NCBI RefSeq assembly: GCF_022045235.1
Contig: NW_027266330.1
Location: forward strand, 33,294,001 to 33,358,000
DNA length: 64,000 nucleotides
Direction: 5' to 3'
From: Haliotis cracherodii
Lineage: Eukaryota
The notes under the pieces are model-generated. The model had not been told where the DNA came from and searched no databases. It saw only the letters and a list, made by a program, of their open reading frames with translations. The translations under genes and the position numbers were made by a program. Positions 4,750-63,379 of this stretch are shown piece after piece; within the stretch, counting starts at the first letter, position 1; every line of letters starts with the position of its first letter.

Positions 4750-7700
4750 CTAAAGGAAAACTATCACAGGGCCTGTTTCGTTCTTATCGGGATCAATATC
4801 CATTAGCTCGTAATGGGGTGCTTCCGGCTGTTCCACTGGATATTCCTCTTCTTTGTCATCTGTTTCTTGCCTGTAAGAAAAATCATGTGTTTGTTTATCG
4901 TCATTGGTAATAGAACATAGGAATATTATCTCCGTATTCAGGGAGGTGTGGATATGGAGTGTGCAGTGTGGGGAGTTTATCGAAAGAAGGAAATTGTCCC
5001 CGGAAAGCCTTGAAATTCTTTATTATCCTTCAGACTGTTGAAAGAAATAATAACCAGAATATCAAGTTGTCGGTCCTTAGCATATATGTAAAATAGGATA
5101 CGTCGAAGTGCTCAGACGAGAGCACAGATGTTAAATATAACAGAAAGCATTCTTAATTTGTCTTGTTCATTGTTTACATAAAGCACTTGGATATAAACCT
5201 TTTGGTGCGTCCGTAGTATCCAATGCATACAGCTACTATGATGCCAACCAGGCAACACGCTGATGATGTTCCGATAATGATCAGTGGTGGACTCTCAGTG
5301 GTAGGCTCTTTGGAAACAATAATGTTATCAAGTTTAATAATATTGTTAACGTGTACGTACACGTATATGTCGCTTATAAACACCAGAATAGTGGCACAGT
5401 AAAATAGTTTACATGCAGAGCCTCTATATCAATAGGTGCAATACCTAAAACCTTGAACTTGTGACACAAAGTACCTACAAATGGACAGATGTTCATTAGG
5501 ATGCGTAAATAAATTATCTGTGATCAAGTAAAGTGGATGACCAAATGTTTATCATATATTTGTATTCTCCGTTCCTACATCTCAGGGTAAATTAGATTGG
5601 GTCATGTTGGAACATTAGAGAAGGCTTAATGAAAACCCATAAAATCAACACCTGTGACCCATTCTAACCTTATCTCTAAACTAATTGATATAAATTCAAA
5701 CCATACCAGTGTGACATTGAACAAAGTCTAATCATCATTCGTCTGAGGACAGCTGATACCATTTCTACGAGTGATTGATTGAGTGAGTGAGTATGGTTTT
5801 ACGCCTCTTTTAGCAATATTCCAGCAATATCACGGCGGGGGACACCAGAAATGGGCTTCACAAATTTTACCCATGTTGGAAATCGAACCCGGCTCTTCAG
5901 CGTGACGAGCGATCCCGTTCTACGAAGAAGGATATTGGTCATCAATTACATCAACGGAATATCATATTCACACACAAATGAGTTATCTTATAAATTGGTT
6001 GATGTATTATTCTATTCCACTGATGCATCTGTTTTAATCCCTTCACAGGTAATGCCCGTAATTGTCAAGTTTCAGATGGTCAGTGTTTTTGTCAACATCT
6101 TGTTAAGGATGTTTGGGTGTCGTTTTTCTAAACTATTGACATGAATGTATAACATATAATGATCTTTATTACTGTCAGTGCATATCCCACAGGTAGTTCT
6201 CAGAGTGACATTCGTGATCAATGCAGTTTCCAAAGCATGAACAGTCCGACCCAGCTTAACTTGGTGTACAATCATCTACACACGCCCCTGAATCAGTGCA
6301 GGACATATTTACACACTTCGAGTTATATCGAGATGAGCAATTAGTACAATACCATCCGACATTACAACCGTGGATACGATCTCCTGAATAGTTGTTACAT
6401 TCGAGGATGTAATTGTTGGGCAGGGGGATTTCTGGCACATGCTGGGACAGAAGTTGTGTGACAGTTTTTACTGCACGCCTTGTCACACCAGTGACCATAA
6501 TATCCAAATAAATAGGTCTTACCACATGTATTATCCTTGACGCAGGTATCTATAGGACAGTCACTTGAACAGGTAGACTTGCATCTTTGATCAGTAATGT
6601 TGCATCCTTTGGTGCAGGTTCCAGACTCCCTGTCACAAATCCCATCAATGCAAACCCTACAGCTGGTGTTACAAAATGCACCGTAATAACCATTGTCACA
6701 CCCTTTCGCACAGGTTCCGTCCTCAGAGAAACAAATATGCTCGATGCAGTTTTCAAAGCATGAACAGTCTGAACCAGCATATCCTGGAGCGCAGCCAGCT
6801 ACACACGCCCCTGTACCATTGCAGGACATATTTACACACATTGGGTTACACTGAGTTGAGCAGTTGGCTCCATACCACCCGCCAGTACAGCCATGAATAC
6901 AGAACCCTGTCATGTGGTCACATTCGGGACTACACTTCTTTGAAGCATTTCTGTCACATGCGCCAGGACCAGCGCGGCAGTTTTCACTGCACACCTTTTC
7001 ACACCTGTGACCATAAAATCCGCGATTACAGCCTTCTTTGCATCCGGCCTTGCATGTTCCTTTACAATTCTCACATGACATCTCACAGTTGGGACCAGTG
7101 TATGGCGAATGACACTGGTCACATATTCCAGTGCTTCTATTGCACGATTTACATTGTTCAGAACAGTTCTTGCAGTCAAGGCCATAGTAGGAGTCGACGC
7201 ATCCAGAAACACAGGATGAATCCATCTGGCAGTACTTACCGACACACCCTCCTTTGCATTCTGTACACTGTCTCCAATTCTTATCACATGGTATGTTGCA
7301 CTTTGGCCCTTCGAATCCTGAAATACAGCCATTGGTGCATACCGCGATGCCACTGCCTGTTTGTAGTTCACACTTTCTATTTCTGCAGCCATTGCTGCAC
7401 TTAGATGTGCATCTCGTGCCGAAATACCCAAGGTGACACTTTGATGTGCAGTAACCTTTGTCGTTACACTTTGAGCAGTTCTGGCTATAATAGCAGGGTT
7501 TTGCTGAAAAGAAAGAATAAGCATTTAGATTGGACAGAGGTAACCATATAGGCAAAGCTATGAGAGCACATTGTGATGCTTCAGACGACTGGGTAGTATT
7601 CATAGTACTTTTGAAAGTAGGATATTGGATCCATGAGTGATATGGACTTTTGAAAACTTCATGTTAATGATTGAAAATAAGCCCAGGTTTAAATAAATAT

Positions 7701-8137
7701 GCTTTGCTTGCTTGTTTGTTGTTTAACGCCACACTCAGCAATATTCCAGCTATATGACGGCGGTCTGTAAACATTCGAGTCGGGACCATACAATCCAGTG
7801 ATTGACATCATGAGCATCGATCCACGCTATTGGGATACGATGACATGTATCAACCAAGTCAGCGAGCCTGACCGCCCCATCCCATTTGTCTCTTCATAAG
7901 ACAAGCATAGTCACCATGTACGGCAAGCATGGGTTGCTGAAGGCCGATTCTACCCCAGATCTTCACGGGTCGAAATAAATATGTGAAGAATATGATAAAT
8001 CAGCCTCCTTAATAGTCACCAAACCAAGAACGTTTATCTTTCGAAGCATAATCCTGGACGACACAATGATTATCTGCAAACTTACCTTGTATGAAAAGTA
8101 GAACGGATGCAAAACATAGGATCACCACAGAAGTCAT
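4750..8137 (-). CDS. Multi-EGF-like type I membrane receptor (MEGF/SCARF-like Cys-rich ectodomain), copy 1, 420 aa
   Basis: Exons: 8137-8086 (MTSVVILCFASVLLFIQ, donor gtaagt); 7503-6523 (981 nt, phase 1-1, 62 Cys, repeated CxxGxxGxxC); 5307-5199 (TM LIIIGTSSACCLVGIIVAVCIGYY, acceptor aag here versus cag in the other copies); 4870-4750 (RQETDDKEEEYPVEQPEAPHYELMDIDPDKNETGPVIVFL*). All introns are GT-AG with compatible phases; total 1263 nt. Confidence 0.88.
6185..6522 (-). pseudogene. Decayed duplicate of EGF repeats at the start of the intron after the EGF exon (also ~15015-15364, 23898-24044, ~33790-34147)
   Basis: Translates as GHWCDKACSKNC...HGCNVGWYCTNCSSRYNSKCVNMSCTDSGACV, paralogous to the exon. 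Frameshifted in copies 1 and 2, largely deleted in copy 3, open in copy 4. Confidence 0.75.
7703..7969 (-). mobile_element. Short non-autonomous retroelement without a tRNA head (also ~1146-1378, 10066-10298, 19262-19515, 25224-25490, 27105-27355, 35327-35594, 46553-46750)
   Basis: 5' end cccgtgaagatc..ggggtagaat; 3' end ctggaatattgctgagtg..gcgttaaacaacaaac. Flanked by the direct repeat aaataaatatg. Absent from the same intron in copy 2. Confidence 0.8.
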
Positions 8138-8234
8138 GATATGTCTGAAAATGGAAAATGATATATACCCAACTATCAGCACAACAAACATATTACTGTA
8201 TTGCTCGAAATAAGTATATGTTTAATCTACTTAC

Positions 8235-8400
8235 TGGTTATGAGAAAGGAACATTTTCAATGTTGGTGTATCAAGCTATAGCAATTGATATGGCCTCCGG
8301 GTGTTAACTCGTGCGAGTTGTAATCGCGGAATCAGACTTCATATTGACAGTTAACCTTCAACTTCCCTATAAGGGGGAAGTGTGAAATGAATCTGTTCAT
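8235..8400 (-). promoter_or_regulatory. Probable non-coding first exon and proximal promoter of receptor copy 1 (equivalents in each copy)
   Basis: A cag|gtaagt-like donor (ccag|taagt read as gtaagt at 8229-8234) lies ~90 nt upstream of an ttttcag acceptor that is 7 nt before the ATG. The arrangement is kept in all four copies. Confidence 0.45.
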
Positions 8401-13611: not shown

Positions 13612-16600
13612 CTAAAGGAAAACTATCACAGGGCCTGTTTCATTCTTATCAGGATCAATATCCATCAGTTCGTAATGGTGTGCTTCCGGCTGTCCCACTG
13701 GATATTCCTCTTCTTTGTCATCTGTTTCTTGCCTGTAAGAAAAATCATGTGTTTGTTTATCGTCATTGGTAATAGGACATATGAATATTATCTCCGTATT
13801 CAGGGAGGTGTGGATGTGGAGTGTGGAGTGTGGGGAGTTTATCGAAAGAAGGAAATTATCCCCAGAAAGGCTTGAAAAATATTATTATGCTTCAGACTGT
13901 TGAAAGAAATATTAAACAGAAAATCAAATTGTCGGTCCTTAGCATATATGTAAAATAGGATACGTCATAGTGCTCAGATGAGAGCATATATGTTAAATAT
14001 TACAGAAAGCATTCTTAATTTGTCTTGTTCATTGTTTACATAAAACACTTGAATATAAACCTTTTGGTGCGTTCGTAGCATCCAATGCATACAGCTACCA
14101 TGATGCCAACCAGGCAACACGCTGATGATGTTCCGATAATGATCAGTGGAAGGCTCTCATTGGTAGGCTCTGTGGAAACAATAATGTTATCAAGTTTAAT
14201 TATATTGTTAATGTGTACGTACACGTATATGTCGCTTATAAACACCAGAATAGTGGCACAGTAAAATAGTTTGCATATCAATAGGTGTAACACCTAAAAC
14301 CTTGAACTTATGACACAAAGTACCTACAAATGGACAGATGTTCAAATAGGATGTGTAAATAAATTATCTGTGATCAAGTAAAGTGGATGACCTAAATGTT
14401 TATCATATATTTGTATTCTCCGTTCCTACATCTCAGGGTAAATTAGATTGGGTCATGTTGGAACATTAGAGAAGGCTTAATGAAAACCCATAAAATCAAC
14501 ACCTGTGACCCATTCTAACCTTATCTCTAAACTTATTGTTATAAATCCAAACCATACCAGTGTGACATTGAACAAAGTTTAATCATCATTCATCTGGAGA
14601 CAGCTGATAACCTTTCTACGAGTGGGTGAGTGAGTATGGTTTTACGCCGCTTTTAGCAATATTCCAGCAATATCATGGCGGGGGACACCAGAAACGGGCT
14701 TCACACATTGTACCCATGTCGGGAATCGGCGTGATGAGCGATCGCTTTCTACGAAGAAGGATATTGGTCATCAATTACATCAACGGAATATCATATTCAC
14801 ACACAAATGAGTTATCTTATAAATTGGTTGATGTATTATTCTATTCCATTGCTGCATCTGTTTTAATTCCTTCACGGGCAATGCCAGGAAATTGTCAGGT
14901 TTCAGATGGTCAGTGTTTTGTCAACATCATATTAAAGAAGTTTGGGTTTAGTTTTTCGAAACTATTGACATGAATGTATAACATATAATGATCTTTATTA
15001 CCGTCAATGCATATCCCACAGGTAGTTCTCAGAGTGACATTCGTGATCAATGCAGTTTCCAAAGCATGAAAAGCCCGACCCAGTTTAACGTGGTGTACAA
15101 TCATCTACACATGCCCCTAAATCAGTGCAGGACATATTTACACACTTCGAGTTTCATCGAGATGAGCAATTAGTACAATACCATCCGACATTACAACCAT
15201 GGAACGATCTCCTGAATAGTTGTCACATTCGAGGATACAATTGTTGGGAGAGGGGGGATTTCTGGCACATGCTGGGACAGAAGTTGGTTGAGTGCCAGCG
15301 CGACAGTTTTTACTGCACATCTTTGCACACCAGTAACCATGATATCCAAATAAATAGGTCTTACCACATGTAATTTCCTTGACGCAGGTATCTATAGGAC
15401 AGTCACTTGAACAGGTAGACTTGCATCTTTGATCAGTAATGTTGCATCCGTTGGTGCAGGTTCCAGACTCCTGCTCACAAATCCCATCAATGCAAACCTC
15501 ACAGCTGGCGTTACAAAATGCACCGTAATAACCATTGTCACACCCTTTCGCACAGGTTCCGTTCTCAGAGAAACAAATATGCTCGTTGCAATTTTCAAAG
15601 CATGAACAGTCTGAACCAGCATATCCTGGTGCACAGCCAGCTACACACGCCCCTGAATCAGTGCAGGACATATTTACACACCTCGGGTTACATTGAGTTG
15701 AGCAGTTGGCTCCAAACCACCCGCCATTACAGCCATGAATACAGATTCCTGTCATGTTGCCACATTCGGGACTACAATTGTTTGAAGCATTTCTGTCACA
15801 TGCATCAAGGCCAGCGCGGCAGTTTTCACTGCACACTTTTTCACACCAGTGACCATAAAATCCGCGATTACAACCTTCTTTGCATCCGGCCTTGCATGTT
15901 CCTTTACAATTCTCACATGACATCTCACAGTTGGGACCAGTGTATGGCGAATGACACTTGTCACATATTCCAGTGCTTCTATTGCACGATTTACATTGTT
16001 CAGAACAGTTCTTGCAGTCACGGCCATAGTAGGAGTCCACGCATCCAGAAACACAGGATGAATTCAGCTGGCAGTACTTACCGACACAACCTCCTTTGCA
16101 TTCTGTACACTGTCTCCAATTCTCATCACATGGTATGTTGCACCTTGGACCTTGGAATCCTGAAATACAGCCATTGGTGCATACCTCGGTGCCACTGTTT
16201 GTGATTTCACAAAATTTATATCTGCAGCCACTGCTGCACTTAGATGTGCATGTCTTTCCGAAATACCCAGTGTGACACTTTGATGTGCAGTAACCTGTGT
16301 CGTCACAGCTAACGCAGTTCTGCCAATAATCGCGGGGTGTTGCTGAAAAAAAAGAATAAGCATTTATATCGGACAGAGGTAAGCAAATAGGCAAATCTAT
16401 GAGAGCATATTGTGATCCTTCAGACGACTGGGTAGTAGTCATAGTACTTTTGAAAGTAGGATATTGGATCCCTGAGTGCTATGAGAGCAAATTGTGAAGC
16501 TTCAGTGAGTGAGTGAGTATGGTTTTACGCCATTTTTTAGCAATATTCCAGTAATATCAGGGCGGAGGACACCAGAAATGGGCTTCACACATTGTGACCA

Positions 16601-16709
16601 TTTCGGGAATCAAACACGGGTCTTAAGCATGACGAGCGAACGCTTTAGCCACTAGGCTTCCGACCTGCGAAGCTTCAGGCGACTGGGTAGTAGTAATAGT
16701 ACTTTTAGC

Positions 16710-16759
<50 letters not shown>

Positions 16760-16863
16760 CAGCGTCAGTAGTAGTAGTAACTCTGGCAGTAGTAGTTGTA
16801 CTGGTAGTAGTAATAGTAGTTGTAGTAGCGGCAGTTGTAATAGCAGTAGTAGCAGTGGTCGTG

Positions 16864-16906
<43 letters not shown>

Positions 16907-17248
16907 CTGGGCCAATAATGAACGTTTCTTCTTATAATAGTAATGTTTATTTTGAAACAAACTACAATGTTTAATATATCTTTATTCTTCGCAACACTTA
17001 GTCAATTTATGAAAGTAGGATAGTGAACCGTGAGTTATTCCCCTTTCAAAAAAACTCCATGTGGGGATTGTATAAGTCCAGGTTGAAATAAGTACGTGAA
17101 GAATATGATAAATTAGACTCCTATAGTCACAAAACCAAGAACGTTTATCTTTCGAAGCATAATCCTGGTCGAGACAATGCATATCTGCAAACTTACCTTG
17201 TATGAAAAGTAGAACGGATGCAAAACATAGGATCACCACAGAAGTCAT
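13612..17248 (-). CDS. Multi-EGF-like type I membrane receptor, copy 2, 419 aa
   Basis: Exons 17248-17197, 16342-15365 (978 nt), 14169-14061, 13732-13612. Frame open, GT-AG introns. The first ectodomain Cys is replaced by Arg. Confidence 0.88.
16505..16667 (-). mobile_element. Short tRNA-derived SINE, specific to the copy 2 intron
   Basis: Same family as 48174-48336; TSD gaagcttcag. Confidence 0.8.
16706..16905. repeat. (GTA)n microsatellite expansion
   Basis: Imperfect GTA trinucleotide run; it explains the poly-L and poly-V ORFs. Confidence 0.95.
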
Positions 17249-20200
17249 GATATGTCTGAAAATGAAAAATAATATAAACCCACCAATCAGCACAGCAAAC
17301 ATATTACTGTATTACTCGAAATAAGTATATGTTTAATCTACTTACTGGTTATGAGAAAGGAACATTTTCAATGTTGGTGTATCAAGCTACAACAATTGAT
17401 ATGGCCTCCGGGTGTTTACTTGTGCGAGTTGTAATCGCGGAATCAGACTTCATATTGACAGTTAACCTTCAACTTCCCTATAAGGGGGAACTAGGAAATG
17501 AATCTGCTTATTAATAAAACATGTGCTCTCTTATGAGAAGAGTTATCTCTTAGTCATGTTGCCAAAATGTACTTAATGATTTCTCTTTCTATTAGCTACG
17601 TGATCAGACTGTTTTTGTTGTTTTTTCATGTAGAACATTACCAAATGATTCCCGTTAGAGAACCGTTTTTATTGCGAGTATATTTCAAAATGTTGTTTGT
17701 TTTTGTATATCTGACGTGGACGCGTATAGTAATGTATTTTACTCACATAAATTGTGAAAGAAAAAGTTTAAAGTTGGAAAAAGACATCACTGGCACAAAT
17801 GTGGTGTACAGGCTCTCCCCTCATTGTGCAACCTGGCAATACACTGTACAACATCCCTCATATCCCTGGGGTTAAAGGCAACAATGGCAGGGATACAAGT
17901 TAGAATGTCGTCTAAGGAGACGCAATTAGCAATGTAGACCTGATTTGTCTTACCTGTGCTCGTGGGATTCGACAAAGTAAAAACGTCTTATACCTGCAAC
18001 GCCTCAAGCTTTCTTCTTACATGAAGCTGGTACGATGTAAAATAATCGTAATTCTATTCAAAGAGGGGCTTAACCAAATTCATTCACTCACCAATAAAGG
18101 AACGCTAAGATTGCACATTTCTCCTGTTGCCACTGGTCAGAACGACATTTCTGAAAAGTCCATTTCAAGCTCCTGACAAGGTGAGGTGAGGTGAAATTGG
18201 GTTTAACGTCGCGTCCGAGATTATTGCACTTATATATTCAAGGTGTATGCACGTGTGTGTGTTTGTGTGGCTGCTTGTACTAGTCCGGACTGATGCCGAT
18301 TTATAGTGCTAGCTCACAGAGATACCATGCCGCAGTTTAACATGAATACCCCACTCAGACATATTATACTGACTCCTAGCCGACCAGTCCTTCTTTTAGC
18401 CCCTTAATGCCGAGCGCCAGACAGGGTAACAACAAGTACCATATTTTAACGTCTTTTGGTATGGTTTGGTTTGGTTTGTTTGTTGTTTCCTGACACCGAC
18501 TCCGAGCCGACCAGTCCATCTTACCTGTGCTCGTGGGATTCGACAGTGAAAACGTCTTATACCTTCAACGCCTCAAGCTTTCGTCTTACATGAAGCTGGT
18601 ACGATGATATATAATCGAAATAACATTCAAAGCGGTGCTCAAACAACTTCACTCAGTCACCAATAAAGGAACGCTAAGATTGCACATTGCTCCTGTTGCC
18701 ACTGGTCAGAACGACATTTCTGAAAAGGTCCATTTCAAGCTCCTGACAGGGATAGCCCGTTCGCGAAACTCTGTATATGCTATCGCTGCCCAAAACATGT
18801 CCCCACAGTTCAATAGCAGCCTGAAACAACGCTTGGAGTTGAACGCACAATCAACTAACTTGTGTTTGCAAACAAGAGATGACTGTCGTGAAGCCGAAGA
18901 CACTTACCTCAGCTAAATGTTTCCTTTGTTAGTCAATTTGAATTTCTAATATTTCAACTATTGTAAGATGGTGAGGTGAAATCGGGTTTAAATTCGCGTC
19001 CAAGATTATTGCACTTATATAGCAACGTGCATGCACCTGTGTGTGTTTGTGTGGCTGCTTGTACTAGTCCGGACTGATGCCGATTTATAGTGCTAGCTCA
19101 CTGAGATACCATGCCGCAATTTAACATGAATACCCCTTCAGACACAGTTTACTGACTCCGAGCCGACCAGTCCTTGTTTAAGGCCTTAATGCCGAGCGCC
19201 AGACGGGGTAACAACAAGTACCATCTTTTAACGTCTTTTGGTATGGTTTGGTTTTGTTTTTGTTTTTTTGTTTAACGCCGCACTCAGTAATATTCCAGCT
19301 ATATGACGGCCATCTGTAAATAATCGAGTCTGGACAAGACAATCCAGTGATTGACAACATGAGTATCGATCCACGTAATTAGGATACTATGACATGCATT
19401 AACCAAGTCAGATAGCCTGACATCCCGATCCCGTTAGTCGCCTCTTACGACAAACACAGTCGCCTTTTATGGCAAGCATGGGTTGCTGAAGACCTATTCT
19501 ACCCCGGATCTTCACAACATTTTCGTTGACTGCAGTTTGACATTGATCAAACAAAGTTCAGTCGTTCAGTCACTGCGAACATCACTGACCTTCTCGGTCG
19601 ACCTGGTCTTTCTTCTGAGAATTTGTAATTTGTAGTTATGCACAGCCCATGATCCGTGGCCAGTCATTGCACATAATATCTGTTCATCTACCCATGCCTA
19701 GTGAAGACAGTTAGCAGTGGTTAATGCGTATTCACGTCAAGCCAACTGTTTTACACATTCTCTGTACCGTAGTAACAACCTTATTTTAGCCCAAAGGTTG
19801 TTCACAAAACCACAGATTCTATCTAGATGATCTGTTCATCAGTCACAAAGGACTCGGTTTTGTTTGTTTGTTTGTTGATTAACGCCACACTCAGCAATAT
19901 TCAAGCTATTTGTCGGCGTTCTGGACCAGACAATACAGTGATTGACATCATCAGCATCGATCCATGCAATTGTGATCACCCGATCCCGTTAGTCCCCTAA
20001 TACGACAAGCATAAGATATTGTAGTGAAGGGTGCAGGCAATGCACACGGAGAAACAATTACATAAGACTGATGTGCACGTGTGTACATGTGTTTGGTCTT
20101 TTTTTTCATTTGATTCTATTTTAGATTAAGAAAACATGGGTTGCTGAAGACCTATTTTACCCCGAAAGTATGAAAAGAAGACCATTTGTCATATATCTGC

Positions 20201-22605: not shown

Positions 22606-25600
22606 CTAAAGGAAAACTATCACAGGGCCTGTTTCGTTCTTATCAGGATCAATATCCATAAGCTCGTACTGGTGTGCTTCCGGCTGTCCCACTGGAAATT
22701 CCTCTTCTTTGTCGTCTTTTTTTTGCCTGTAAGAGAAATCATGTGTTTGTTTATCGTCATTGGTAACAGGACATAGGAATATTATCTCCGTATTCAGGGA
22801 GGTGTGGGGTGTGAAGTGTGGAGTGTGGGGAGTTTATCGAAAGAAGGAAATTGTCCCCGAAAAGGCTTGAAATTTTTTATTATCCTTCAGACTGTTGAAA
22901 GAAATAATAAACAGAATATCAAATTATCGGTCCTAAGTATATATGTAAAATAGGATACGTCACAGTCCTCAGATGAGAGCATATATGTTAAATATAACAG
23001 AAAGCATTCTTAATTTGCCTTGTTCATTGTCTACATAAAGCACTTGAATATAAACCTTTTTGTGCGTCCGTAGCATCCAATGCATACAGCTACCATGATG
23101 CCAACCAGGCAACACGCTGATGATGTTCCGATTATGATCAGTGGAAGGCTCTCACGGGTAGGCTCTGTGGAAACAATAATGTTATCAAGTTTAATTATAT
23201 TGTTAATGTGTACATACACGTATATGTCGCTAATAAACACCAGAATAGTGGCACAGTAAAATAGTTTACATGCAGGGCCTCTACATCAATAGGTGTAATA
23301 CCTTAAACCTTGAACTTATGAGACAAAGTACCTACAAATGGACAGATGTTCAAATAGGATGTGTAAATAAATTATCTGTGATCAAGTAAAGTGGATGACC
23401 CAAATGTTTATCATATATTTGTATTCTCCGTTCCAACATCTCAGGGTTATAAATCCAAACCATACCAGTGTGACATTGAACAAAGTCTAATCATCATTCA
23501 TCTGGAGACAGCTGATAACCTTTCTACGAGTGAGCGAGTGAGTGAGTGAGTATGGTTTTACGCCTCTTTTAATAATGTTACAGCAATATCAAGGCGGGGG
23601 ACACCAGAAACGGGCTTCACACATTGTACCCATGTTGGGAATCGAACCCGGGTCTTCGGTGTGACGAGCGATCGCTTTCTACGAAGAAGGATATTAGTCA
23701 TCAATTACATCAACGGAATATCATATTCACACACAAATGAGTTATCTTATAAATTTGTTGATGTATTTCATTGATGCATCTGTTTTAATTCCTTCCCGGG
23801 GATAGCCCGTAATTTTCAAGTTTCAGATGGTCAGTGTTTTGTCAACATCATATTAAAGAAGTTTGGGTTTAGTTTTTCTAAACTATTGACATGAATTACG
23901 ATCTCCTGAATAGTTGTTACATTCGAGGATGCAATTGTTGGGCAGGGGGATTTCTGGCACATGCTGGGACAGAAGTTGTGTGACAGTTTTTACTGCACAC
24001 CTTTTCACACAAGTAGCCATAATATCCAAATAAATAGGTCTTACCACATGTAATTTCCATGACGCAGGTATCTATAGGACAGTCACTTGAACAGGTAGAC
24101 ATGCATCTTTGATCAGTAATGTTGCATCCTTTGGTGCAGGTTCCAGACTCCCGGTCACAAATCCCATCAATGCAAACCTCACAGCTGGTGTTACAAAATG
24201 CACCATAATAACCATTGTCACACCCTTTCGCACAGGTTCCGTCCTCTGAGAAACAAATATGCTCGATGCAGTTTTCAAAGCATGAACAGTCTGAACCAGC
24301 ATATCCTGGTGCACAGCCAGCTACACACGCCCCTGTATCAGTGCAGGACATATTTACACACCTCGGGTTACACTGAGTTGAGCAGTTAGCTCCATACCAC
24401 CCGCTATTACAGCCATGAATACAGATTCCTGTCATGTTGTTACATTCGGGACTACACTTCTTTGAAGCATTTCTGTCACATGTGCCAGGACCAGCGCGGC
24501 AGTTTTCACTGCACACCTTTTCACACCTGTAACCATAAAATCCGCGATTACAGCCTTCTTTGCATCCGATCTTGCATGTTCCTTTACAATTCTCACATGA
24601 TATCTCACAGTTGGGACCAGTGTATGGCGAATGACACTGGTCACATATTCCAGTGCTTCTATTACACGATTTACATTGTTCAGAACAGTTCTTGCAGTCA
24701 AGGCCATAGTAGGAGTCCACGCATCCAGAAACACAGGATGAACCCAGCTGGCAGTACTTATCGACACAACCTCCTTTGCATTCTGTACACAGTCTCACCT
24801 TCTGTTCACATGGTATGTTGCACCTTGCACCGTAAAATCCTGAAATACAGCCATGGGTGCATGTATCGGTGCCACTGTCACTGGATAGGTTACATGACAT
24901 ATTCCTGCAGCCACTGCTGCACTTAGATATGCATCTCTTGCCGAAATACCCAAGTTGACACTTTGATATGCAGTTACCTATGTCATCACACCTTAAGCAG
25001 CTATGGCTAAACTTGCAGGGTTTTGCTGAAAAGAAAGAATAAGCATTTAGATCGGACAGAGGTAACCAAATAGGCAAAGCTATGAGAGCAAATTTTGATG
25101 CTTCAGACGACTGGGTAGTAGTCATAGTACTTTTGAAAGTAGGATATTGGATCCATGAGTGTTATTGACTTTTGAAACCTTCATGTTAATGATTGAAAAT
25201 ATGTCCAGGTTGAAATAAATATGCTTTGCTTGCTTGTTAGTTGTTAAACGCCGCACTCAGCAGTAGTCAAGCTATATGGCGGCGGTCTGTAAACAATCGA
25301 GTCGGGACTAGACAATTCAGTGATTGAAATCATGAGAATCGATCCACGCTATTGGGATACGATGACATGTATCAACCAGGTCAGCGAGCCTGACCACCCA
25401 ATCCCGTTGGTCGCCTCATAAGACATGCATAGTCGCTTTTTACGGCATGCATGGGTTGCTGAAGACCAATTCTACCCCGGATCTTCACGGATCGAAATAA
25501 ATATGTGAAGAATATGATAAATTAGACTCCTATAGTCACAAAACCTAGAACGTTTATCTTTCGAAGCAGATTCCTAGACGAAACAATGAATATCTGCAAA

Positions 25601-25657
25601 CTTACCTTGTATGAAAAGTAGAACGGATGCAAAACATAGGATCACCACAGAAGTCAT
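22606..25657 (-). CDS. Multi-EGF-like type I membrane receptor, copy 3, 420 aa
   Basis: Exons 25657-25606, 25025-24045, 23164-23056, 22726-22606. Frame open. Tail RQKKDDKEEEFPVGQPEAHQYELMDIDPDKNETGPVIVFL*. Confidence 0.88.
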
Positions 25658-28527
25658 GATATGTCTGAAAATGGAAAATAATATATACCCACCTATCAGC
25701 ACAACAAACACATTACTGTATTACTCGAAATAAGTATATGTTTAATCTACTTACTGGTAATGAGAAAGGAACATTTTCAATGTTGGTGTATCAAGCTATA
25801 GCAATTGATATGGCCTCCGGGTGTTAACTCGTGCGAGTTGTAATCGCGGAATCAGACTTCATATTGACAGTTAACCTTCAACTTCCCTATAAGGGGGAAG
25901 TGTGAAATGAATCTGTTCATTAATAAAACATGTGCTCTCTTATGAGACGAGTTATCTCTTAGTCATGTTGCAAAAATGTACTTAATGATTTATCTTTCTA
26001 TTAGCTACGTGATCAGACTGTTTTTGTTGTTTTTTCATGTAAAACATTACCAAATGATTCCCGTTAGAACACCGTTTCTATTGCGAGTATATTTCAAAAT
26101 GTTGTTTGTTTTTGTATATCTGACGTGGACGCGTACAGTAATGTATTTTTACTCACATAAATTGTGAAAGAAAAAGTTTAAAGTTGGAAAAAGATATCAC
26201 TGGCACAAATATGGTGTACAGGCTCTTCCCTCATTGTGCAACCTGGCAATAAACTGTACAACATCCCCTCATATCCCTGTGGTTAAAGACAAAAATGACA
26301 TTGGCAGGAATACAAGATGGAATGTTGTCTTAGAAGACGCAATTAGCTATGTAGACTTGATTTGTCTCACCTGTGCTCATGGGATTCGATAGTGAAAACG
26401 TCTTATACCTTCAACGCCTCAAGCTTTCCTCTTACATGAAGCTGGTACGGTGTAAAATAATCGTAATTCTTTTCAAAGCGGGGCTTAACCAACTTCACTC
26501 AGTCACCAATAAAGGAACGCTAAGATTGCACATTGCTCCTGTTGTCAGTGGTCAGAACGACGTTTCTGAAAAGGTCCATTTCAAGCTCCTGACAAGGATA
26601 GCCCGTTCGCGAAACTCTGTATATGCTATCGCTGCCCAAAACAGGACCCCACAGTTCAATAGCAGCCTGCAACAATGCATGGAGTTGAACGCACAATGAA
26701 CTATCTGGTGTTTGCAAACAAGATATGACTGTCGTGACGCCGAATATGCTTACCTCAGCTAAATGTTTCCTTTGTTAGTCAATTTGAATTTATATTTCAT
26801 TTCAACTATTGTAAGGTGGTGAGGTGAATTGGGGTTTAACGTCACGTCCAAGATTAGTGCACTTATATAGCGACGTACATGTACGTGTGTGTGTTTGTGT
26901 GCCTGCTTGTACTAGTCCGGACTAATGCCGATTTATAGTGATAGCCCACTGAGATACCATACCGCAGTTTAACTTGAATACCCCACTCAGACACAGTATA
27001 CTGACTCCGAGCCGACCAGTCCTTGTTTTAGCCCCTTAATGCCGAGCGCCAGACAGGGTAACAACAAGTACCATCTTTTAACGTCTTTTGGTATGGTTTG
27101 GTTTGGTTTGTTGTTTAACGACGCACTCAGTAATATTCGGCTATATGACAGCGGTCTGTAAATAATCGAGTCTGGACAAGACAATCCAGTGATTCGAAAC
27201 ATGAGCATTGATCCACGCAATTGGGATACTATGACATGCATTACCCAAGTCAGCGACCTGACCACCTGATCCCGTTAGTCGCCTCTTACGACAAACACAG
27301 TCGCCTTTTATCGGAAGCATCGGTTGCTGAAGACCTTTTCTACCCCGGATCTTCAAAACATTTTCGTTGACTGCAGATTGACATTGATCACAAAGTTCAG
27401 TCGTTCAGTCACTGCGAACATCACTGACCTTCTCGGTCGACCTGGTCTTTCTTCTGAGATTTTGTAATTTGTAGTTATGCACAGCCCTTGATCCGTGGCC
27501 AGTCATTGCACATAATATCTGTTCATCTACCCATGCCTGGTGAAGACAGTGGTTAATGCGTATTCCCGTCAAGCCAACTTTTTTACACATTCTCTGTACC
27601 GTAGTCACAACCTTATGTTAGCCCAAAGGTTGTTCACAAAACCACAGATCCTATCTAGATGATCTGTTCATCAGTCACAAAGGATTCGGTTTTGTTTGTT
27701 TGTTTGTTGATTAACGCCGCACTCAGCAATATTCAAGCTATTTGGCGGGGCTCTGGACCAGACAATACAGCGATTGACATCATCAGCATCGATCCACGCA
27801 ATTGTGACCACCCGATCCCGTTAGTCGCCTAATACGACACGCATACGATGTAGTGAAGGGAGCAGGCAATGCACACGGAGGAACAATTACATTAGACTGA
27901 TGTGCACGTGTGTACATGTGTTTGGTCTTTTTTCATTTGATTCTATTTTAGATTAAGAAAACATCGGTTGCTGAAGACCTATTTTACCCCTGATCTTCAC
28001 GTGTCCAAAGAGAATGGATATTGTGAGCAATACTTTTCAAACTATTTCACAATGCATCTGTTAGGATCGTAACTACCAAATAGTTTTCTCTCCAGTCTGC
28101 AATACTTTAGCCCTCCAAGTATACAGTGAGTTATTTCAATGATCTAGTTCACAGAAACGTGAGTAATCACTGTAAAGTGTCACTTGAAACCTTCAAATTT
28201 GAAAATGGAAGTGACAGGTTCCTGCAAATTAAGAAAGAAATGGAAAAAGAGCATACTGAATTGCCTTTTAGGCTATTTAATGCAATCGAAACCTGTTGCT
28301 TCGAAATCCTGTTGACCAGAAAAATAGTTCGACCTCATTTCCGCCATCAGACAACAGACGCAAACGTCCCACTTCGTACATTTTGGACAAATAACATTTA
28401 TGTAGTATGAAAACAGGATCATTTGTCATATATCTGCATCACGTGCCCGCTGATCGGCGCGCATGATTATTGACAATCCCAAACGGTTGCACAGCCATCA
28501 CTGCTTCGCTGACTGAAGGTGTTACTA

Positions 28528-30065: not shown

Positions 30066-32361
30066 TATTAATTAGTTCACTCAACTTTTATTCAGTACAT
30101 GACAAATCACTTTATCGTGGCAGCCTTTACACAGTCTAATCAACGTTTTCTTGTATTTTATGATTCAAGGGGTATCATGCTTAGGATATTATATTGATAT
30201 ACATTCTTTTTGTACTTATCAGGTCAAGTCAACAACGATATAAGGATCTATACCGAAACGTCGCTTTTTACAGTTTTAAAAAAGTTCTTATCCATAAAAT
30301 TGTGTCTACCTTCAATTGCGTTGTCTTCCATCACCTCACTTCACCTCACCTCACTTCACCTCACCTCACCTCACCTCACCGCAACACAACGCATTGCATT
30401 GCATTGCATTACATTATAACCTCCAATTTATCTTGATATCAATGACTATTACTTTGCACCAAGCAGTGACGTGCACCACACCATGAGTATGTTTCTTGGA
30501 AGCACCATACCCATGCTTGTGGATTTCACCAAATTGGGAAACGTCTAAGACCTGCATAATTTTAGGCTTTCCTCCAATATTAAGCTGACACGCCGTATAA
30601 CTGGAATATTGTTCAAAGCGTCAATCAACCAAACTTACTCACTCACTCGGTGGCACAGGTGTCCCTGTCCAGAGTTGCGTCCCTTGGCTACGCCAGAATC
30701 ATATGATCACGGTTTTAAACCAAACTCACTCACTCACTTGTAATTTTCTCTTGACCCCGATGACTAAGCCAGTCACCTTGGGTCACCTGCTGGTGATTTA
30801 ATTCATGAGTGTTTCACGTTCGAAAGATATTGTTTGACCTCATCCTCCACTAAAGGAAAACTTCTAAATTTATCATGTACTATTAAATGGTGGTTATCAA
30901 ATACACTGTTCATTAAAATATTCATTCTAACCAAACAACTCACTGACATTAATTCTACCATGACATTGAAGAATGCTTGATTCTGATATTTCTTTGCTAC
31001 GGAAGCCCCTTTTAAATATAATAAGCCTTTTCACGATCACCTATAGGAACTTAAAGCATTAAGCACATTACCTCTATTGCACGCTGTGTCGCCAATGCAA
31101 GACAGGTCTCAGATACACGCCGAAATTAATAGACGGCTTAGCGTCTGATAGAGGAAATACGGTAGTTTGATATCGGATGTTTTTATCGATGATGTGATGT
31201 TCTAGGCAGTAACACTGCTTCCATGGTGAGATTATAAGGCATAACGAAAGCATATCTTTTGCATACAAATGATAATGTTTATGAAATTGTTAGGGACATG
31301 TTCGATGAATAGACCCAGAACAGGCAATTTCCTCATTGAAAATGAAAGTACAATATCACATTATAAAAAGTGTTGTAAAAAACTTTATTCATGACAACAT
31401 GTTGTTTACAAACCGTTTTGTAATCGACAATCATTGCCATGTCCGTCAACCACCAACGTTAGGGTATGGCAGGAGGGGATATGAAAGTCCACCAGAATAC
31501 ACTCCTCCCTTTGAAAGGCCACGAAAACAATGTCCCAACATCACTGGAGTCACAGCACGGGCAATTGATCATAACAACTTATCAAACTTGACAAACTTCA
31601 TTTCTGAAGACACATAATTAAGCAAATCATACACAAACCACTGTTTTTTGGCAACAACTGTCACATTTGTTTCACACACTGGCGTCGAATACTGTGAAAT
31701 CTTGAAATCTATAGGTCAAATCAGATCCCTCCTGTCAAAATAGCCGGCTCATCCGCAGCCTAAAAATGGAGATGTTCTGTCATTCTCCAGTTCCATTGGC
31801 AATCATGTTGCACCATCAGGCTCATTCCTGGTAAATCTACAAGTTAATGTTCAACGACATCATAGATCTGGGTTGTCATCTAGCTTGTATCTACTCTACA
31901 GCGGGACTCAATCAAATTTCAAAACACAGTAGGTTTATCTCCTAAATAATATACTTTAAGCTCTGTAGATTCGTGAGGATTAGATAAAGTTTTCCATCGA
32001 TGTAACTGTTTTGATTGCTTCATGGGGAATGTTTTAACTGGCAAGTGTTTAGTCAACATTTGGCACAAAGACAGACAGCTTGGGTTTAGGTTTTACAAAC
32101 TATCAATATGAAAGTATAGCATATTATGCATTATTCATTACTTCATAAGACGGCTAAGCATGCTGATTATACCGTAGAAATTAAGAATAATAAGAATTCT
32201 GAACTATATTTAAAGTTATGTGTTATCATAGATTCAAGCAAGTTATAAAATATATTCTAAAAGTAACTAAGTGGTATTGTTTGATTATATTATATCATGT
32301 GCTGTGCTGTTCTGTGGTTTGTTGTGTTGTGTGGTGGGAGATTATGGGACGTGATCCTACA

Positions 32362-35300
32362 CTAAAGGAAAACTATCACAGGGCCTGTTTCGTTCTTATC
32401 AGGATCAATATCCATTAGCTCGTACTGGTGTGCTTCCGGTTGTCCCGCTGGATATTCCTCTTCTTTCTTATCTGTTTCTTGCCTGTAAGAAAAATCATGT
32501 GTGTGTCGTCATTGGTAATAGGACATAGGGATATTATCTCCGTGTTCAGGGAGGTGTGGGGTGTGGAGTGTGGGGATTTTATCGAAAAAAGGAAATTGTC
32601 CCTGGAAAGGCTTGAAAAACATTATTATGCTTCAGACTGTTGACAGAAATAATAAACAGAATATCAAATTGTCGGTCCTTAGCATATATATAAAATAGGA
32701 TACGTCACAGTGCTCAGATGAGAGCATATATGTTAAATATAACAGAAAGCATTCTTAATTTGCCTTGCTCATTGTTTACATAAAACACTTGAATATAAAC
32801 CTTTTGGTGCGTCCGTAGCATCCAATGCATACAGCTACCATGATGCCAACCAGGCCACACGCTGATGATGTTCCGATAATGATCAGTGGAAGGCTCTGAG
32901 AGGTAGGCTCTGTGGAAACAATAATGTTATCAAGTTTAATTATATTGTTAATGTGAACGTATACGTATATGTCGCTAATAAACACCAGGATAGTGGCACA
33001 GTAAAATAGTTTACATGCAGGGCCTATATATCAATAGGTGCAATACCTAAAACCTTGAACTTATGACACAAAGTACCTACAAATGGACAGATGTTCAAAT
33101 AGTATGCGTAAATAAATTATCTGTGATCAAGTAAAGTGGATGACCAAATGTTTATCATATATTTGTATTCTCCGTTCCTACATCTCAGGGTAAATTAGAT
33201 TGAGTCATTTTGGAACATTAGAGAAGGTTTAATGAAAACCCATAAAATCAACACCTGTGACCCATTCTAACCTTATCTCTAAACTTATTGTTATAAATCA
33301 GAACCCTACCAGTGTGACATTGAACAAAGTCTAATCATCATTCATCTCGAGACAGCTGATAACCTTTCTACGAGTGAGCGAGTGAGTGAGTGAGTATGGT
33401 TTTACGCCGCTTTTAGCAATATTCCAGCAATATCAAGGCGGGGGACACCAGAAACGGGCTTCACATATTGTACCCATGTCGGGAATCGAACCCGGGTCTT
33501 CGGCGTTACGAGCGATCGCTTTCTATGAAGAAGGATATTGGTCATCAATTACATCAACGGAACATCACATTCACACACAAATGAGTTATCTTATAAATTT
33601 GTTGATGTATTATTCTATTCCATTGATGCATCTGTTTTAATTCCTTCACGGGGATAGCCCGTAATTGTCAGGTTTCAGATGGTCAGTGTTTAGTCAACAT
33701 CTTGTTAAAGAAGTTTGGGTTTAGTTTTTCTAAACTATTGACATGAATGTATAACATATCATGATCTTTATTACCGTCAATGCATATCCCACAGGTAGTT
33801 CTCAGAGTGACATTCATGATCAATGCAGTTTCCAAAGCTTGAACAGTCCGACCCAGCATAACCTGGTATACAATCATCTACACACGCCCCTAAATCAGTG
33901 CAGGACATATTTACACACTTCGAGTTACATCGAGATGAGCAATTAGAAAAATACCATCCGACATTACAACCATGGATACGATCTCCTGAATAGTTGTCAC
34001 ATTCGAGGATGTAATTGTTTGGGGGTGGGGGGTGGGGGGGATTTCTGGCAAATGCTGGGACAGAAGTTGCGTGAGGGCCAGCGCTACAGTTTTTACTGCA
34101 CACCTTGTCACACCAGTAACCATAAATTCCAAATAAATAGGCCTTACCACATGTAATTTCCTTGACGCAGGTATCTATAGGACAGTCACTTGAACAGGTA
34201 GACTTGCATCTTTGATCAGTAATGTTGCATCCTTTGGTGCAGGTTCCAGACTCCTGGTCACAAATCCCATCAATGCAAATCTCACAGGTTGTGTTACAAA
34301 ATGCACCGTAATAACCATTAGCACACCCTTTCGCACAGGTTCCGTCCTCAGAGAAACAAATATGCTCGATGCAGTTTTCCAAGCATGAACAGTCTGAACC
34401 AGCATATCCTGGTGCACAGCCAGCTACACACGTCCCTGAATCAGTGCAGGACATATTTACACACATTGGGTTACATTGAGTTGAGCAGTTGGCTCCAAAC
34501 CACCCGCCATTACAGCCATGAATACAGAATCCTGTCATGTGGTCACATTCGGGACTACACTTCTTTGAAGCATTTCTGTCACATGCGTCAGGACCAGCGC
34601 GGCAGTTTTCACTGCACACCTTTTCACACCAGTGACCATAAAATCCGCGATTACAGCCTTCTTTGCATCCGGTCTTGCATGTTCCTTTACAATTCTCACA
34701 TGACATCTCACAGTTGGGACCAGTGTATGGCGAATGACACTGGTCACATATTCCAGTGCTTCTATTGCACAATTTACATTGTCCAGAACAGTTCTTGCAG
34801 TCAAGGCCATAGTAGGAGTCCACGCATCCAGAAACACAGGATGAACCCAGCTGGCAGTACTTACCGACACACCCTCCTTTGCATTCTGTACACTGTCTCC
34901 AGTTCTCATCACATGGTATGTTGCACCTTGTACCTTGGAATCCTGAAATACAGCCATGGGTGCATACCTCGGTTCCACCGTCTGTGAGTAGTTCACACGA
35001 TCTATTTCTGCAGCCACTGCTGCACTTAGATATGCATCTCTTGCCGAAATACCCAGGGTCACAATCTGATGTGCAGTAACCTTTATCGTCACAGCTTACG
35101 CAGTTCCGGCTATAATCGCAGGGTTTTGCTGAAAAGAAATAACAAACATTTAGATCGGACAGAGGTAACCAAACAGGCAAAGCTATGAGAGCAAATTGTG
35201 ATGCTTCAGATGACTGCGTAGTAGTCATAGTAATATTGAAAGTAGGATATTGGATCCATGATTGTTGTGGACTTTTGAAACCTTCATGTTAATGATTGAA

Positions 35301-35760
35301 AATAAGTCCAGGTTGAAATTAATATGCTTTGCTTGCTTGTTTGTTGTTAAACGCCGCGCTTAGCAATATTCCAGCTATATGACGACGGTCTGTAAACAAT
35401 CGAATCGGGACTAGACAATTCAGTGATTAACATCATGAGCATCGATCCATGCAAATGGGATACGATGTCATGTATCAACCAAGTCAGTGAGCCTGACCAC
35501 CCCATCCCGTTTGTCGCCTCATAAGACAAGCATACTCGCCTTTTACGGTATGCGTGGGTTGCTGAAGACCGATTCTACCACGGATCTTCACGGGTCGAAA
35601 CAAATATGCAAAGTATATGATAAATTAGGCTCCTATAGTCACAAAACCAAGAACGTTTATCTTTCGAAGCATAATCCTGGTCGAGACAATGAATATCTGC
35701 AAACCTACCTTGTATGAAAAGTAGAACGGGTGCAAAGCATAGGATCACCACAGAAGTCAT
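32362..35760 (-). CDS. Multi-EGF-like type I membrane receptor, copy 4, 420 aa
   Basis: Exons 35760-35709, 35128-34148, 32909-32801, 32482-32362. Frame open, GT-AG introns. Tail RQETDKKEEEYPAGQPEAHQYELMDIDPDKNETGPVIVFL*. Confidence 0.88.
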
Positions 35761-59080: not shown

Positions 59081-59084
59081 CTCG

Positions 59085-63340: not shown

Positions 63341-63379
63341 TCCAGCAGAAAAAAACATCACCCGAATGGCCGCACATGA

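What the first reader, a model, noticed from the sequence alone, without database searches (positions are those of the whole stretch)
4750..35760. Tandem array of four intact EGF-repeat membrane receptors: candidate undescribed variable recognition-receptor system
Seen in sequence: four young paralogues all splice into open 419-420 aa proteins (signal peptide, ~9 EGF-like repeats in one exon, TM, Tyr-bearing tail). Exon lengths are fixed at 52/978-981/109/121 nt while the introns and spacers carry many indels and TE insertions. The ORF track shows only the ectodomain as a long ORF and misses the tail exon entirely. Established: tandem, copy-variable receptor families with a variable distal domain and a constant signalling tail are typical of innate-immune and allorecognition loci. 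Inference: this is such a locus in a mollusc, not a single-copy MEGF10/Draper orthologue, since it has no EMI domain, no NPxY and only a short tail.
Basis: partly seen in the sequence, partly recalled or inferred. Interest (0 to 1): 0.88.

Follow-up and report, generated by a model that had tools for sequence, protein, structure and literature searches.

The report
Abalone SREC-like EGF receptor array
Four neighbouring, intact and transcribed genes in the black abalone genome (part of a six-gene array) encode small membrane receptors of the scavenger-receptor/MEGF type, with a fast-changing outer tip and an unchanging inner tail. Two of them are already in the public annotation, and their function has not been tested.

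Summary

Corrections:
- The window is Haliotis cracherodii (RefSeq assembly).
- The array has six copies; two lie left of the window.
- A 5' exon with an upstream ATG was missed, so the proteins are 428-429 aa.
- c3 and c4 match RefSeq XP_071086722 and XP_071086710 ('cell death abnormality protein 1-like') exactly over the EGF exon.

A spliced public contig joins the EGF, TM and tail exons at the predicted sites.

The genes belong to a family with at least 147 scored loci in this genome. Only 13 loci carry this short tail. The closest solved relative is human SCARF1 (profile E 8.6e-6; Foldseek E 8.9e-7; Z 5.8). No EMI domain, NPxY motif or NIM repeat is present.

The first 80 ectodomain codons change about four times faster at amino-acid sites than the stalk (pN/pS 1.6 against 0.67). 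The copies are mosaic, which points to gene conversion. The last 20 residues (YELM...GPVIVFL) are invariant.

Most likely these are diversified scavenger or phagocytic recognition receptors. An immune or allorecognition role is not shown.

Apart from two notes on this same window, the look-ups I made in the scan's earlier notes (near this place, and genome-wide for 'EGF') listed no note on this family.

The parts
4750..8254 (-). Gene c1, from start codon to stop. Coding exons: 8235-8254, 8086-8144, 6523-7503, 5199-5307, 4750-4870.
   Evidence: GT/AG at every junction and an open frame. No matching protein turned up in the database search over the 180-570 aa range.
13612..17365 (-). Gene c2. 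Coding exons: 17346-17365, 17197-17255, 15365-16342 (978 nt, with one codon deleted), 14061-14169, 13612-13732.
   Evidence: The frame is open. The first ectodomain Cys is replaced by Arg.
22606..25774 (-). Gene c3. Coding exons: 25755-25774, 25606-25664, 24045-25025, 23056-23164, 22606-22726.
   Evidence: The EGF-exon translation is an exact substring of RefSeq XP_071086722.1 (P0045), and the tail exon matches at 100%.
32362..35877 (-). Gene c4. Coding exons: 35858-35877, 35709-35767, 34148-35128, 32801-32909, 32362-32482.
   Evidence: The EGF-exon translation is an exact substring of RefSeq XP_071086710.1 (P0001). A spliced contig in run X13 joins 34148-34279, 32800-32909 and 32286-32481. 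A contig in run X6 ends exactly at 35128.
7264..7503 (-). Variable tip of c1: the first 80 codons of the EGF exon. The equivalent stretches are 16103-16342 (c2), 24786-25025 (c3) and 34889-35128 (c4).
   Evidence: There are 0.37 nonsynonymous changes per site here against 0.09 in the stalk, and pN/pS is 1.6 against 0.67. Net charge of the tip ranges from 0 to +8 between copies.
6523..7263 (-). Conserved stalk of c1: EGF/laminin-type repeats 3 to 8 plus a C-terminal Cys-rich piece.
   Evidence: Eight C-x3-[GSP]-aromatic-x-G-x2-C units and 62 Cys. The AlphaFold2 model has pLDDT 70-90 in this region.
5199..5307 (-). Transmembrane exon of c1. The c2, c3 and c4 equivalents are 14061-14169, 23056-23164 and 32801-32909.
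   Evidence: hydrophobic segment IIIGTSSACCLVGI(I/M)VAVCIG.
4750..4870 (-). Cytoplasmic tail exon of c1, ending in the invariant YELMDIDPDKNETGPVIVFL and the stop codon. The c2, c3 and c4 equivalents are 13612-13732, 22606-22726 and 32362-32482.
   Evidence: the last 20 codons show 0 nonsynonymous and 5 synonymous changes; only 13 loci in the genome have this exon.
6185..6505 (-). Decayed internal duplicate of EGF repeats 5-7 inside intron 2 of c1. It is about 73% identical to 6706-7021 and is frameshifted with a stop. The equivalents are 15014-15347 (c2), 23950-24027 (c3, mostly deleted) and 33787-34130 (c4, still open, which produces the 483-aa ORF).
   Evidence: The RefSeq models do not include it. 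No contig covers 33764-33910 in three of the four runs, and depth there is under 1 in the fourth.

Best explanation
The locus is a lineage-specific tandem array in black abalone: six genes, four of them in the window. They encode short type I membrane proteins of the scavenger-receptor class F / MEGF10 / CED-1 kind.

Each protein has these parts:
- a signal peptide;
- a rigid rod of eight laminin/SCARF1-type EGF-like repeats plus a Cys-rich end piece;
- one transmembrane helix;
- an acidic cytoplasmic tail of about 45 residues that ends in the invariant YELMDIDPDKNETGPVIVFL.

Shown: the genes are real, spliced as predicted, transcribed and kept intact by selection. They diversify mainly in the two membrane-distal repeats. 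Sequence is exchanged between copies.

Inferred: the variable, mostly basic tip binds ligands such as polyanionic microbial or altered-self surfaces, as in SCARF1. The conserved Tyr motif (YxxPhi within an acidic stretch) and the hydrophobic C-terminus couple the receptor to endocytosis, phagocytosis or a kinase/adaptor. The array would then give the animal a small repertoire of related recognition specificities.
For: Gene structure: exons, phases, splice sites; 5' exon in all six copies; the RefSeq junctions are identical, and c3 and c4 match the RefSeq proteins exactly over the EGF exon.

Transcription. Contig 10 of run X13 joins the EGF, TM and tail exons at 34148|32909 and 32800|32481. Contig 5 of X1 ends at 34148, and a contig of the same depth covers the TM exon. 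Contig 28 of X6 ends at 35128 with 106 more nt upstream. That split fits 59 nt of exon 1 plus 47 nt of the 5' exon.

Constraint: 2 exon indels against 24 expected; 0 stops against 9.4 expected; 61 of 62 Cys columns invariant; last 20 codons: 0 nonsynonymous, 5 synonymous.

Variable tip. The tip differs from the stalk in its nonsynonymous:synonymous ratio (Fisher p 0.028). Tip nonsynonymous rate against introns 2 and 3 gives OR 3.1, p 3e-9.

Mosaic copies: (526 of 903 informative site pairs fail the four-gamete test; PHI-like permutation 11/2000).

Charge pattern: (tip net 0 to +8 on a stalk of -5 to -8). SCARF1 binds modified LDL through positively charged residues, and teichoic acid competes for that binding (PMC11563577).

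The Y-x-E/D-Phi...GPxIVFL end is conserved in short-tailed paralogues of four Haliotis species.
Against: No ligand, tissue or induction data exist. The runs were coded and available only as contigs, guessed to be RNA.

No Pfam EGF model reaches its threshold (EGF_TEN 16-19 bits against a cutoff of 65). The structural Z of 5.8 is modest.

Positive selection is not established. The ratio of 1.6 has binomial p 0.10, synonymous change is also raised in the tip, and the 136 nt of intron 1 next to the tip are nearly as divergent (OR 1.5, p 0.10).

Overall pN/pS for the EGF exon is about 1, which relaxed constraint on non-Cys positions could also produce.

c1 and c2 have no protein record in the size range searched and no copy-specific RNA evidence. 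c2 lacks one Cys.

The tail-motif readings (AP-2 YxxPhi, SH2 docking, PDZ class II) come from general knowledge and were not tested.
Confidence: 0.55

Rival explanations
1. The proteins are cell-cell adhesion or self-recognition molecules used in tissue patterning, cell spacing or haemocyte attachment. They would act through homophilic or heterophilic EGF-rod contacts rather than by sensing non-self.
For: The closest solved relative, SCARF1, forms homodimers through its N-terminal EGF repeats (PMC11563577). The Drosophila EGF-repeat receptor Eater is needed for haemocyte attachment as well as phagocytosis (PMC4359741). A variable tip on a constant stalk would suit matching specificities equally well.
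Against: Developmental adhesion genes are usually conserved and few in number. Here the family has at least 147 loci, the tip is fast-evolving and mosaic, and even the nearest H. rufescens relatives differ by about 12% in protein. No binding was tested.
Confidence: 0.2
2. The copies are largely redundant products of recent birth-and-death duplication. They drift under relaxed constraint, and the tip variability has no adaptive meaning.
For: pN/pS over the whole EGF exon is about 1. c2 has lost a Cys. The copy left of the window has AT instead of GT at the exon-1 donor. c1 and c2 were not found as annotated proteins. Three tail exons in the sister array carry a TAG. The intron next to the tip is also divergent.
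Against: All six copies keep open frames, splice sites and 61 of 62 Cys columns at 6-10% divergence. Exon indels are 2 against 24 expected, and stops are 0 against 9.4 expected. The 20-residue C-terminus shows only synonymous change. Spliced transcripts exist. H. rufescens sequences nest inside the clade, so the copies have persisted since before that species split.
Confidence: 0.12
3. The four units are an assembly artefact: haplotypes or collapsed repeats laid out in tandem.
For: Unit identity is high (90-95%) across about 9 kb. No long-read check was possible.
Against: The units differ by private transposon insertions and by deletions of 100-228 nt. Amino-acid identity between copies is 83-88%. 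There are two different intron-1 types and six distinct RefSeq-consistent loci on a 63.4-Mb chromosome-scale contig. H. rufescens homologues are interleaved among the copies in the tree.
Confidence: 0.02
4. The genes are true orthologues of CED-1/Draper/MEGF10 engulfment receptors and work through NPxY/CED-6 and ITAM/Syk signalling.
For: RefSeq names them 'cell death abnormality protein 1-like'. Long-tailed paralogues carry NPxY and YxxL.
Against: There is no EMI domain. The tails of c1-c4 have no NPxY and no ITAM. The tail is only about 45 aa. The family is huge and lineage-specific rather than one-to-one.
Confidence: 0.03

Closest known systems
Scavenger receptor class F (human SCARF1/SREC-I and SCARF2)
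   Same: Both are type I membrane proteins whose ectodomain starts directly with a curved rod of EGF-like repeats, with no EMI domain. SCARF1 is the only significant sequence-profile match in the PDB (E 8.6e-6) and the top structural match (Foldseek E 8.9e-7; Z 5.8 with 31% identity over 72 residues). The distal part is basic, as in the SCARF1 ligand site (PMC11563577).
   Different: SCARF1 has a long cytoplasmic domain, whereas the tail here is about 45 aa with its own invariant motif. SCARF1 and SCARF2 are two conserved vertebrate genes, whereas this is a tandemly expanded, fast-evolving family. Ligand binding was not tested here.
CED-1 / Draper / MEGF10-11 / PEAR1 engulfment receptors
   Same: The repeat style is shared: C-x3-G-aromatic-x-G-x2-C laminin-type EGF units. 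Both have a single TM. Long-tailed paralogues in the same Haliotis family keep NPxY and YxxL, and RefSeq names the genes after this group.
   Different: There is no EMI domain. c1-c4 have no NPxY and no ITAM or YxxL (they have YELM). There are 8-9 repeats instead of about 15-17. No Pfam EGF_PEAR1L or EGF_laminin hit was obtained.
Drosophila Nimrod family (Eater, NimC1)
   Same: These are EGF-repeat transmembrane phagocytosis receptors of haemocytes with short tails (PMC6852320, PMC4359741). That their genes are clustered and that binding maps to the N-terminal repeats is from my own knowledge. This is the best functional analogy for a clustered repertoire of EGF-rod receptors.
   Different: The NIM repeat signature and the CCxGY motif are absent. 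No sequence or fold match points to this family specifically. The resemblance is analogy, not membership.
Other expanded mollusc recognition-receptor families (FREPs, C1qDC and similar) and the 'MEGF' expansion reported for the vent snail Gigantopelta aegis
   Same: All are lineage-specific expansions of recognition-type genes in molluscs. MEGF is listed among the immunity-related expanded families in PMC7895826.
   Different: That paper gives only a family count. It does not describe gene structure, a tip/stalk/tail pattern or tail classes. FREPs and C1qDC proteins use unrelated binding domains.

Membership tests
CED-1/Draper/MEGF10 | N-terminal EMI domain | tested here: not met
   A Pfam scan of the full-length products P0001, P0045, P0046 and P0048 at E up to 1 gave no EMI hit. 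The mature protein starts directly with Cys-rich repeats.
CED-1/Draper/MEGF10 | Many atypical (laminin/PEAR1-type) EGF repeats | tested here: inconclusive
   Eight repeat units were found by motif and the fold matches laminin-type EGF modules at Z 3.7-4.5. Pfam EGF_laminin and EGF_PEAR1L gave no hit, and EGF_TEN is far below its cutoff.
CED-1/Draper/MEGF10 | NPxY motif in the cytoplasmic tail | tested here: not met
   A pattern search found none in P0001, P0045, P0046 or P0048. It is present only in the long-tailed paralogues P0010, P0012 and P0050.
CED-1/Draper/MEGF10 | YxxL / ITAM in the tail | tested here: not met
   The only conserved Tyr motif is YELM, a single copy. The leftmost array member P0048 has YWEI and YSHL.
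Scavenger receptor class F (SCARF1/2) | Ectodomain made of EGF-like repeats from the N-terminus, related in sequence and fold to SCARF1 | tested here: met
   Profile search E 8.6e-6 against 8hna. Foldseek E 8.9e-7, probability 1.00. VIA-align Z 5.8, rmsd 5.2, 72 residues aligned, 31% identity. These are moderate scores.
Scavenger receptor class F (SCARF1/2) | Long cytoplasmic domain | tested here: not met
   The tail after the TM is about 45-49 aa. SCARF1 is described as having a large cytoplasmic portion (PMC11563577).
Scavenger receptor class F (SCARF1/2) | Binding and uptake of modified LDL or other polyanionic ligands | not testable with these tools
   The only relevant observation is the charge pattern: tip net 0 to +8.
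Nimrod/Eater | NIM repeat consensus (CxPxCxxxCxNGxC...) and the CCxGY motif | tested here: not met
   A pattern search found zero matches in P0001, P0045, P0046 and P0048.
Haliotis short-tail subfamily (defined here) | C-terminus of the form Y-x-[ED]-Phi ... GPxIVFL-COOH, encoded by a separate 121-nt last exon | tested here: met
   It is identical in c1-c4 and in the copy to the left. It occurs at 13 loci in the genome. It is also present in H. rufescens, H. rubra and H. asinina proteins.

The most novel reading that the evidence does not exclude
The short-tailed arrays (this one and its sister at 4.5-5.0 Mb on the same chromosome) form a gene-conversion-driven repertoire of polymorphic non-self or allorecognition receptors. 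Segments of the two distal EGF repeats are shuffled between copies to create new specificities, and these are read out through one invariant tail motif found only in abalones. This would be an EGF-rod counterpart of snail FREPs or sea-urchin Sp185/333.
Probability: 0.2. Interest if true: 0.65.

Novelty: new member of a known kind. Interest (0 to 1): 0.35.

Why it matters
Molluscs have no antibodies and rely on expanded families of surface and humoral recognition proteins. EGF-rod (SR-F/MEGF-like) receptors are among the largest of these families in genome annotations, yet they are almost unstudied.

This locus gives a clean, fully resolved example. It has a variable basic tip, a rigid conserved stalk, an invariant Tyr-bearing tail, and sequence exchange between copies. 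These features can be turned directly into binding, uptake and population-genetic experiments.

The host species, black abalone, is critically endangered and was devastated by withering syndrome, a bacterial disease (own knowledge). Candidate phagocytic receptor loci that vary between individuals could therefore be useful markers for resistance studies.

If the family proves only to be redundant adhesion-type genes, the finding is ordinary.

Tried and rejected
Exons were searched by reference. For full-length work I used P0001 and P0045, whose EGF and tail exons match c4 and c3 exactly.
I could not list the RefSeq gene calls around c1 and c2, nor fetch other Haliotis loci.
- Single-sequence phmmer against the PDB gave only chance HypA hits.
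- Pfam gave nothing above threshold for the ectodomain or the full proteins.
- A search with the TM plus tail region found only Haliotis proteins. The tool's word-sharing limit means a blank beyond Haliotis says little.
- Reads: only Logan contigs of runs guessed to be RNA were available.
- The first intron-based neutral control was spoiled by non-homologous insertions in intron 1 of c2 and the left copy. It was redone with introns 2 and 3 and with the 136 nt next to the exon.
- I first took the 94-95% tblastn identity to the RefSeq proteins as a sign of another species. It came from the signal peptide being aligned to translated intron. Exon-only comparison gives 100%.
- Literature searches for a description of this family in abalone, oyster or molluscs found only gene-list mentions.
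- Complex prediction and the search of protein representatives were not used. No binding claim is made, and a Cys-rich query would mostly collect unrelated EGF proteins.
The N run at 49009-49165 was left alone.
Full report
**What is there**

The window holds four long minus-strand ORFs of 402-483 aa, spaced 8.7-9.8 kb apart. A self-comparison shows four units that are 90-95% identical over exons, introns and spacers. Window positions 1-3195 are already part of another unit.

I rebuilt each gene from the sequence. In every copy the exons measure 52, 981 (978 in c2), 109 and 121 nt. All introns are GT..AG, the phases are 1/1/2, and no exon has a stop.

**Identity of the genome and of the genes**

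A protein search with the EGF exon of c1 returned only Haliotis proteins at high score. The window is G000:C67:33294001-33358000. C67 is 63,398,646 bases long, the same length as the H. cracherodii contig that encodes the best hits.

The EGF-exon translations of c3 and c4 are exact substrings of RefSeq XP_071086722.1 (P0045) and XP_071086710.1 (P0001). Both are 429 aa and named 'cell death abnormality protein 1-like'.

They start nine codons earlier. The genes therefore have at least five coding exons and give products of 428-429 aa.

No protein matching c1 or c2 was found in the 180-570 aa range the tool covers.

Exons were searched by reference, and P0001 and P0045 served as the full-length products of c4 and c3.

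**Extent of the array and of the family**

The genome search found six EGF exons at 84-100% identity to c1. Two of them lie left of the window.
- The nearer left copy (RefSeq P0046) has the same TM and tail exons. Its exon-1 donor reads AT instead of GT.
- The farthest left copy (P0048, 489 aa) uses a different, roughly 107-aa tail.

To the right of c4 the array ends in transposase remains, and an unrelated gene fragment follows.

Genome-wide there are 147 scored matches out of 1265 first-look candidates. They sit in clusters on C67, C26, C6, C35, C31, C34 and C11. The 121-nt tail exon is much rarer, at 13 loci: five here, seven in a sister array at C67:4.58-4.98 Mb (three of them with a TAG), and one weak hit.

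**Transcription**

Only Logan contigs of runs guessed to be RNA were on offer. Laid on c4, they gave three informative records:
- A 458-nt contig in run X13 aligns as 34148-34279, then 32800-32909, then 32286-32481. This joins the EGF, TM and tail exons at the predicted borders.
- An 857-nt contig in X1 stops at 34148, and a contig of the same depth covers the TM exon.
- A contig in X6 stops exactly at the EGF-exon acceptor (35128) and carries 106 further nt. Its depth splits between two bins as expected for 59 nt of exon 1 plus 47 nt of the 5' exon.

The runs come from four coded organisms, so relatives also splice this way.

The ORF extension beyond the EGF-exon donor is the reason for the 483-aa ORF in c4. 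It is a decayed internal duplicate of repeats 5-7 and is not part of the RefSeq products. Contigs are absent or at depth under 1 over 33764-33910. One run shows low depth at 33911-34057, which I could not explain.

**Selection on the genes**

Compared with introns 2 and 3 (22 indel events), the exons have 2 indels where 24 would be expected (P 1e-8). One of these is an in-frame codon loss. The other, a 1-nt difference in the last exon of the left copy, may come from how I placed that exon's acceptor. There are no stops where 9.4 would be expected (P 6e-5).

Sixty-one of 62 Cys columns are invariant. The last 20 codons of the tail show five synonymous and no nonsynonymous changes. These are maintained genes, not decaying copies.

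**Variable tip**

An alignment of the six EGF exons shows that change is concentrated in the first 80 codons. Minimum nonsynonymous changes per site are 0.37 there against 0.09 in the rest. pN/pS is 1.6 against 0.67, and the difference in the nonsynonymous:synonymous ratio has Fisher p 0.028.

The tip's amino-acid-changing rate is three times the rate in introns 2 and 3 (OR 3.1, p 3e-9). It is not clearly above the 136 nt of intron 1 that adjoin it (OR 1.5, p 0.10), and the test for a ratio above 1 alone gives p 0.10. Diversifying selection is likely but not proven. A local rise in mutation or an older coalescence cannot be excluded.

The copies are mosaics. Of 903 informative site pairs, 526 fail the four-gamete test, and neighbouring sites are more compatible than shuffled ones (11/2000). 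This points to gene conversion between copies.

Net charge of the tip ranges from 0 to +8 between copies, on a stalk of -5 to -8.

In a protein tree, H. rufescens sequences nest among the six copies with moderate support. The array therefore predates that species split and is not an assembly of haplotypes.

**What kind of protein**

Pfam finds nothing above threshold in the ectodomain or the full products, and no EMI domain.

A profile of 36 family members matches one solved protein significantly: human SCARF1 (E 8.6e-6). An AlphaFold2 model has mean pLDDT 69, and most of the ectodomain lies at about 70-90. Its best Foldseek hit is the SCARF1 N-terminal fragment (E 8.9e-7), followed by Notch ligands and laminin-type EGF modules. 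The second-look aligner gives SCARF1 Z 5.8, then perlecan and laminin LE modules at Z 3.7-4.5. [quoted passage not shown]

Eight C-x3-G-aromatic-x-G-x2-C units are present. NIM-repeat and CCxGY signatures are absent.

**Tails**

Haliotis family members fall into two tail classes.
- Short tails end in Y-x-[ED]-Phi...GPxIVFL-COOH. This end is found in four Haliotis species.
- Long tails begin with a related Y-x-E-I-x-D-x-D motif and continue with SYTHL or NPxYxxL and Y.KYITP.

The family thus descends from, or is sister to, the CED-1/SR-F type. The genes in the window are a truncated-tail derivative of it. YELM fits the general YxxPhi sorting signal and also SH2-type motifs, and V-F-L-COOH fits a class II PDZ ligand. 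These readings come from general knowledge and were not tested.

**Literature**

I found no description of this family's structure or function. MEGF appears in a list of expanded immunity-related families in a vent snail (PMC7895826). Two MEGF10 genes are listed in the Aplysia immunome (PMC9334734). SCARF1 structure and charge-based ligand binding are described in PMC11563577. The Drosophila EGF-repeat receptors Eater and NimC1 are described in PMC6852320 and PMC4359741.

**Verdict**

This is a lineage-expanded, variable-tip, constant-tail receptor array and not a Draper orthologue. However, it is a member of the known SR-F/MEGF kind, two of the four genes are already annotated, and an immune or allorecognition role remains inference.

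Noticed in passing
G000:C67:33283024-33284001 (EGF exon; L002) and L001:8880-9170 (tail exon): The leftmost array member (RefSeq P0048, 489 aa) shares the EGF exon but uses a different TM and a tail of about 107 aa containing YWEI and YSHL. The array therefore mixes a long-tailed and five short-tailed receptors, a layout that recalls paired receptors.
   Followed up: partly
L003, exon-1 donor of the copy just left of the window (genome about 33293144): The exon-1 donor reads AT instead of GT (CATACAAG|ataagt), yet RefSeq still models a 429-aa product (P0046). This may be a non-canonical site, an assembly error or a dying copy.
   Followed up: no
window 33323-33616 and 35234-35674 (also about 7700-7965, 46552-46750, 60536-60795): Short interspersed repeats lie inside introns 1 and 2, with contig depth in the hundred-thousands in all four runs. 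These are SINE-like elements that are abundant in transcript assemblies.
   Followed up: no
window 29156-29842 (+), 38378-39420 (-), 41806-42219 (-): Broken Tc1/mariner-type transposase ORFs (Pfam DDE_3, HTH_Tnp_Tc3_2). One lies between c3 and c4 and two lie just beyond the array.
   Followed up: yes
window 50248-50676 (-): An ORF with a strong farnesoic acid O-methyltransferase N-terminal domain (Pfam Methyltransf_FA, E 2.7e-36). It is probably one exon of a neighbouring gene. An N run lies next to it at 49009-49165.
   Followed up: partly
window 53434-54218, 57300-59700, 63373-63919: Three minisatellite arrays with roughly 50-60-nt periods in the self-comparison. They create long spurious ORFs on both strands.
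   Followed up: no
window 33911-34057: Run X13 shows contig depth of about 8 just downstream of the EGF-exon donor of c4, inside the still-open relic duplicate. This could be intron retention, an alternative donor, or cross-mapping from a longer paralogue.
   Followed up: no
G000:C67:4.54-4.98 Mb: A sister array of about 12 EGF-exon loci, 60-71% identical to c1, with seven short-tail exons. Three of those exons contain a TAG. RefSeq fuses two of its members into a 939-aa model (P0049).
   Followed up: partly
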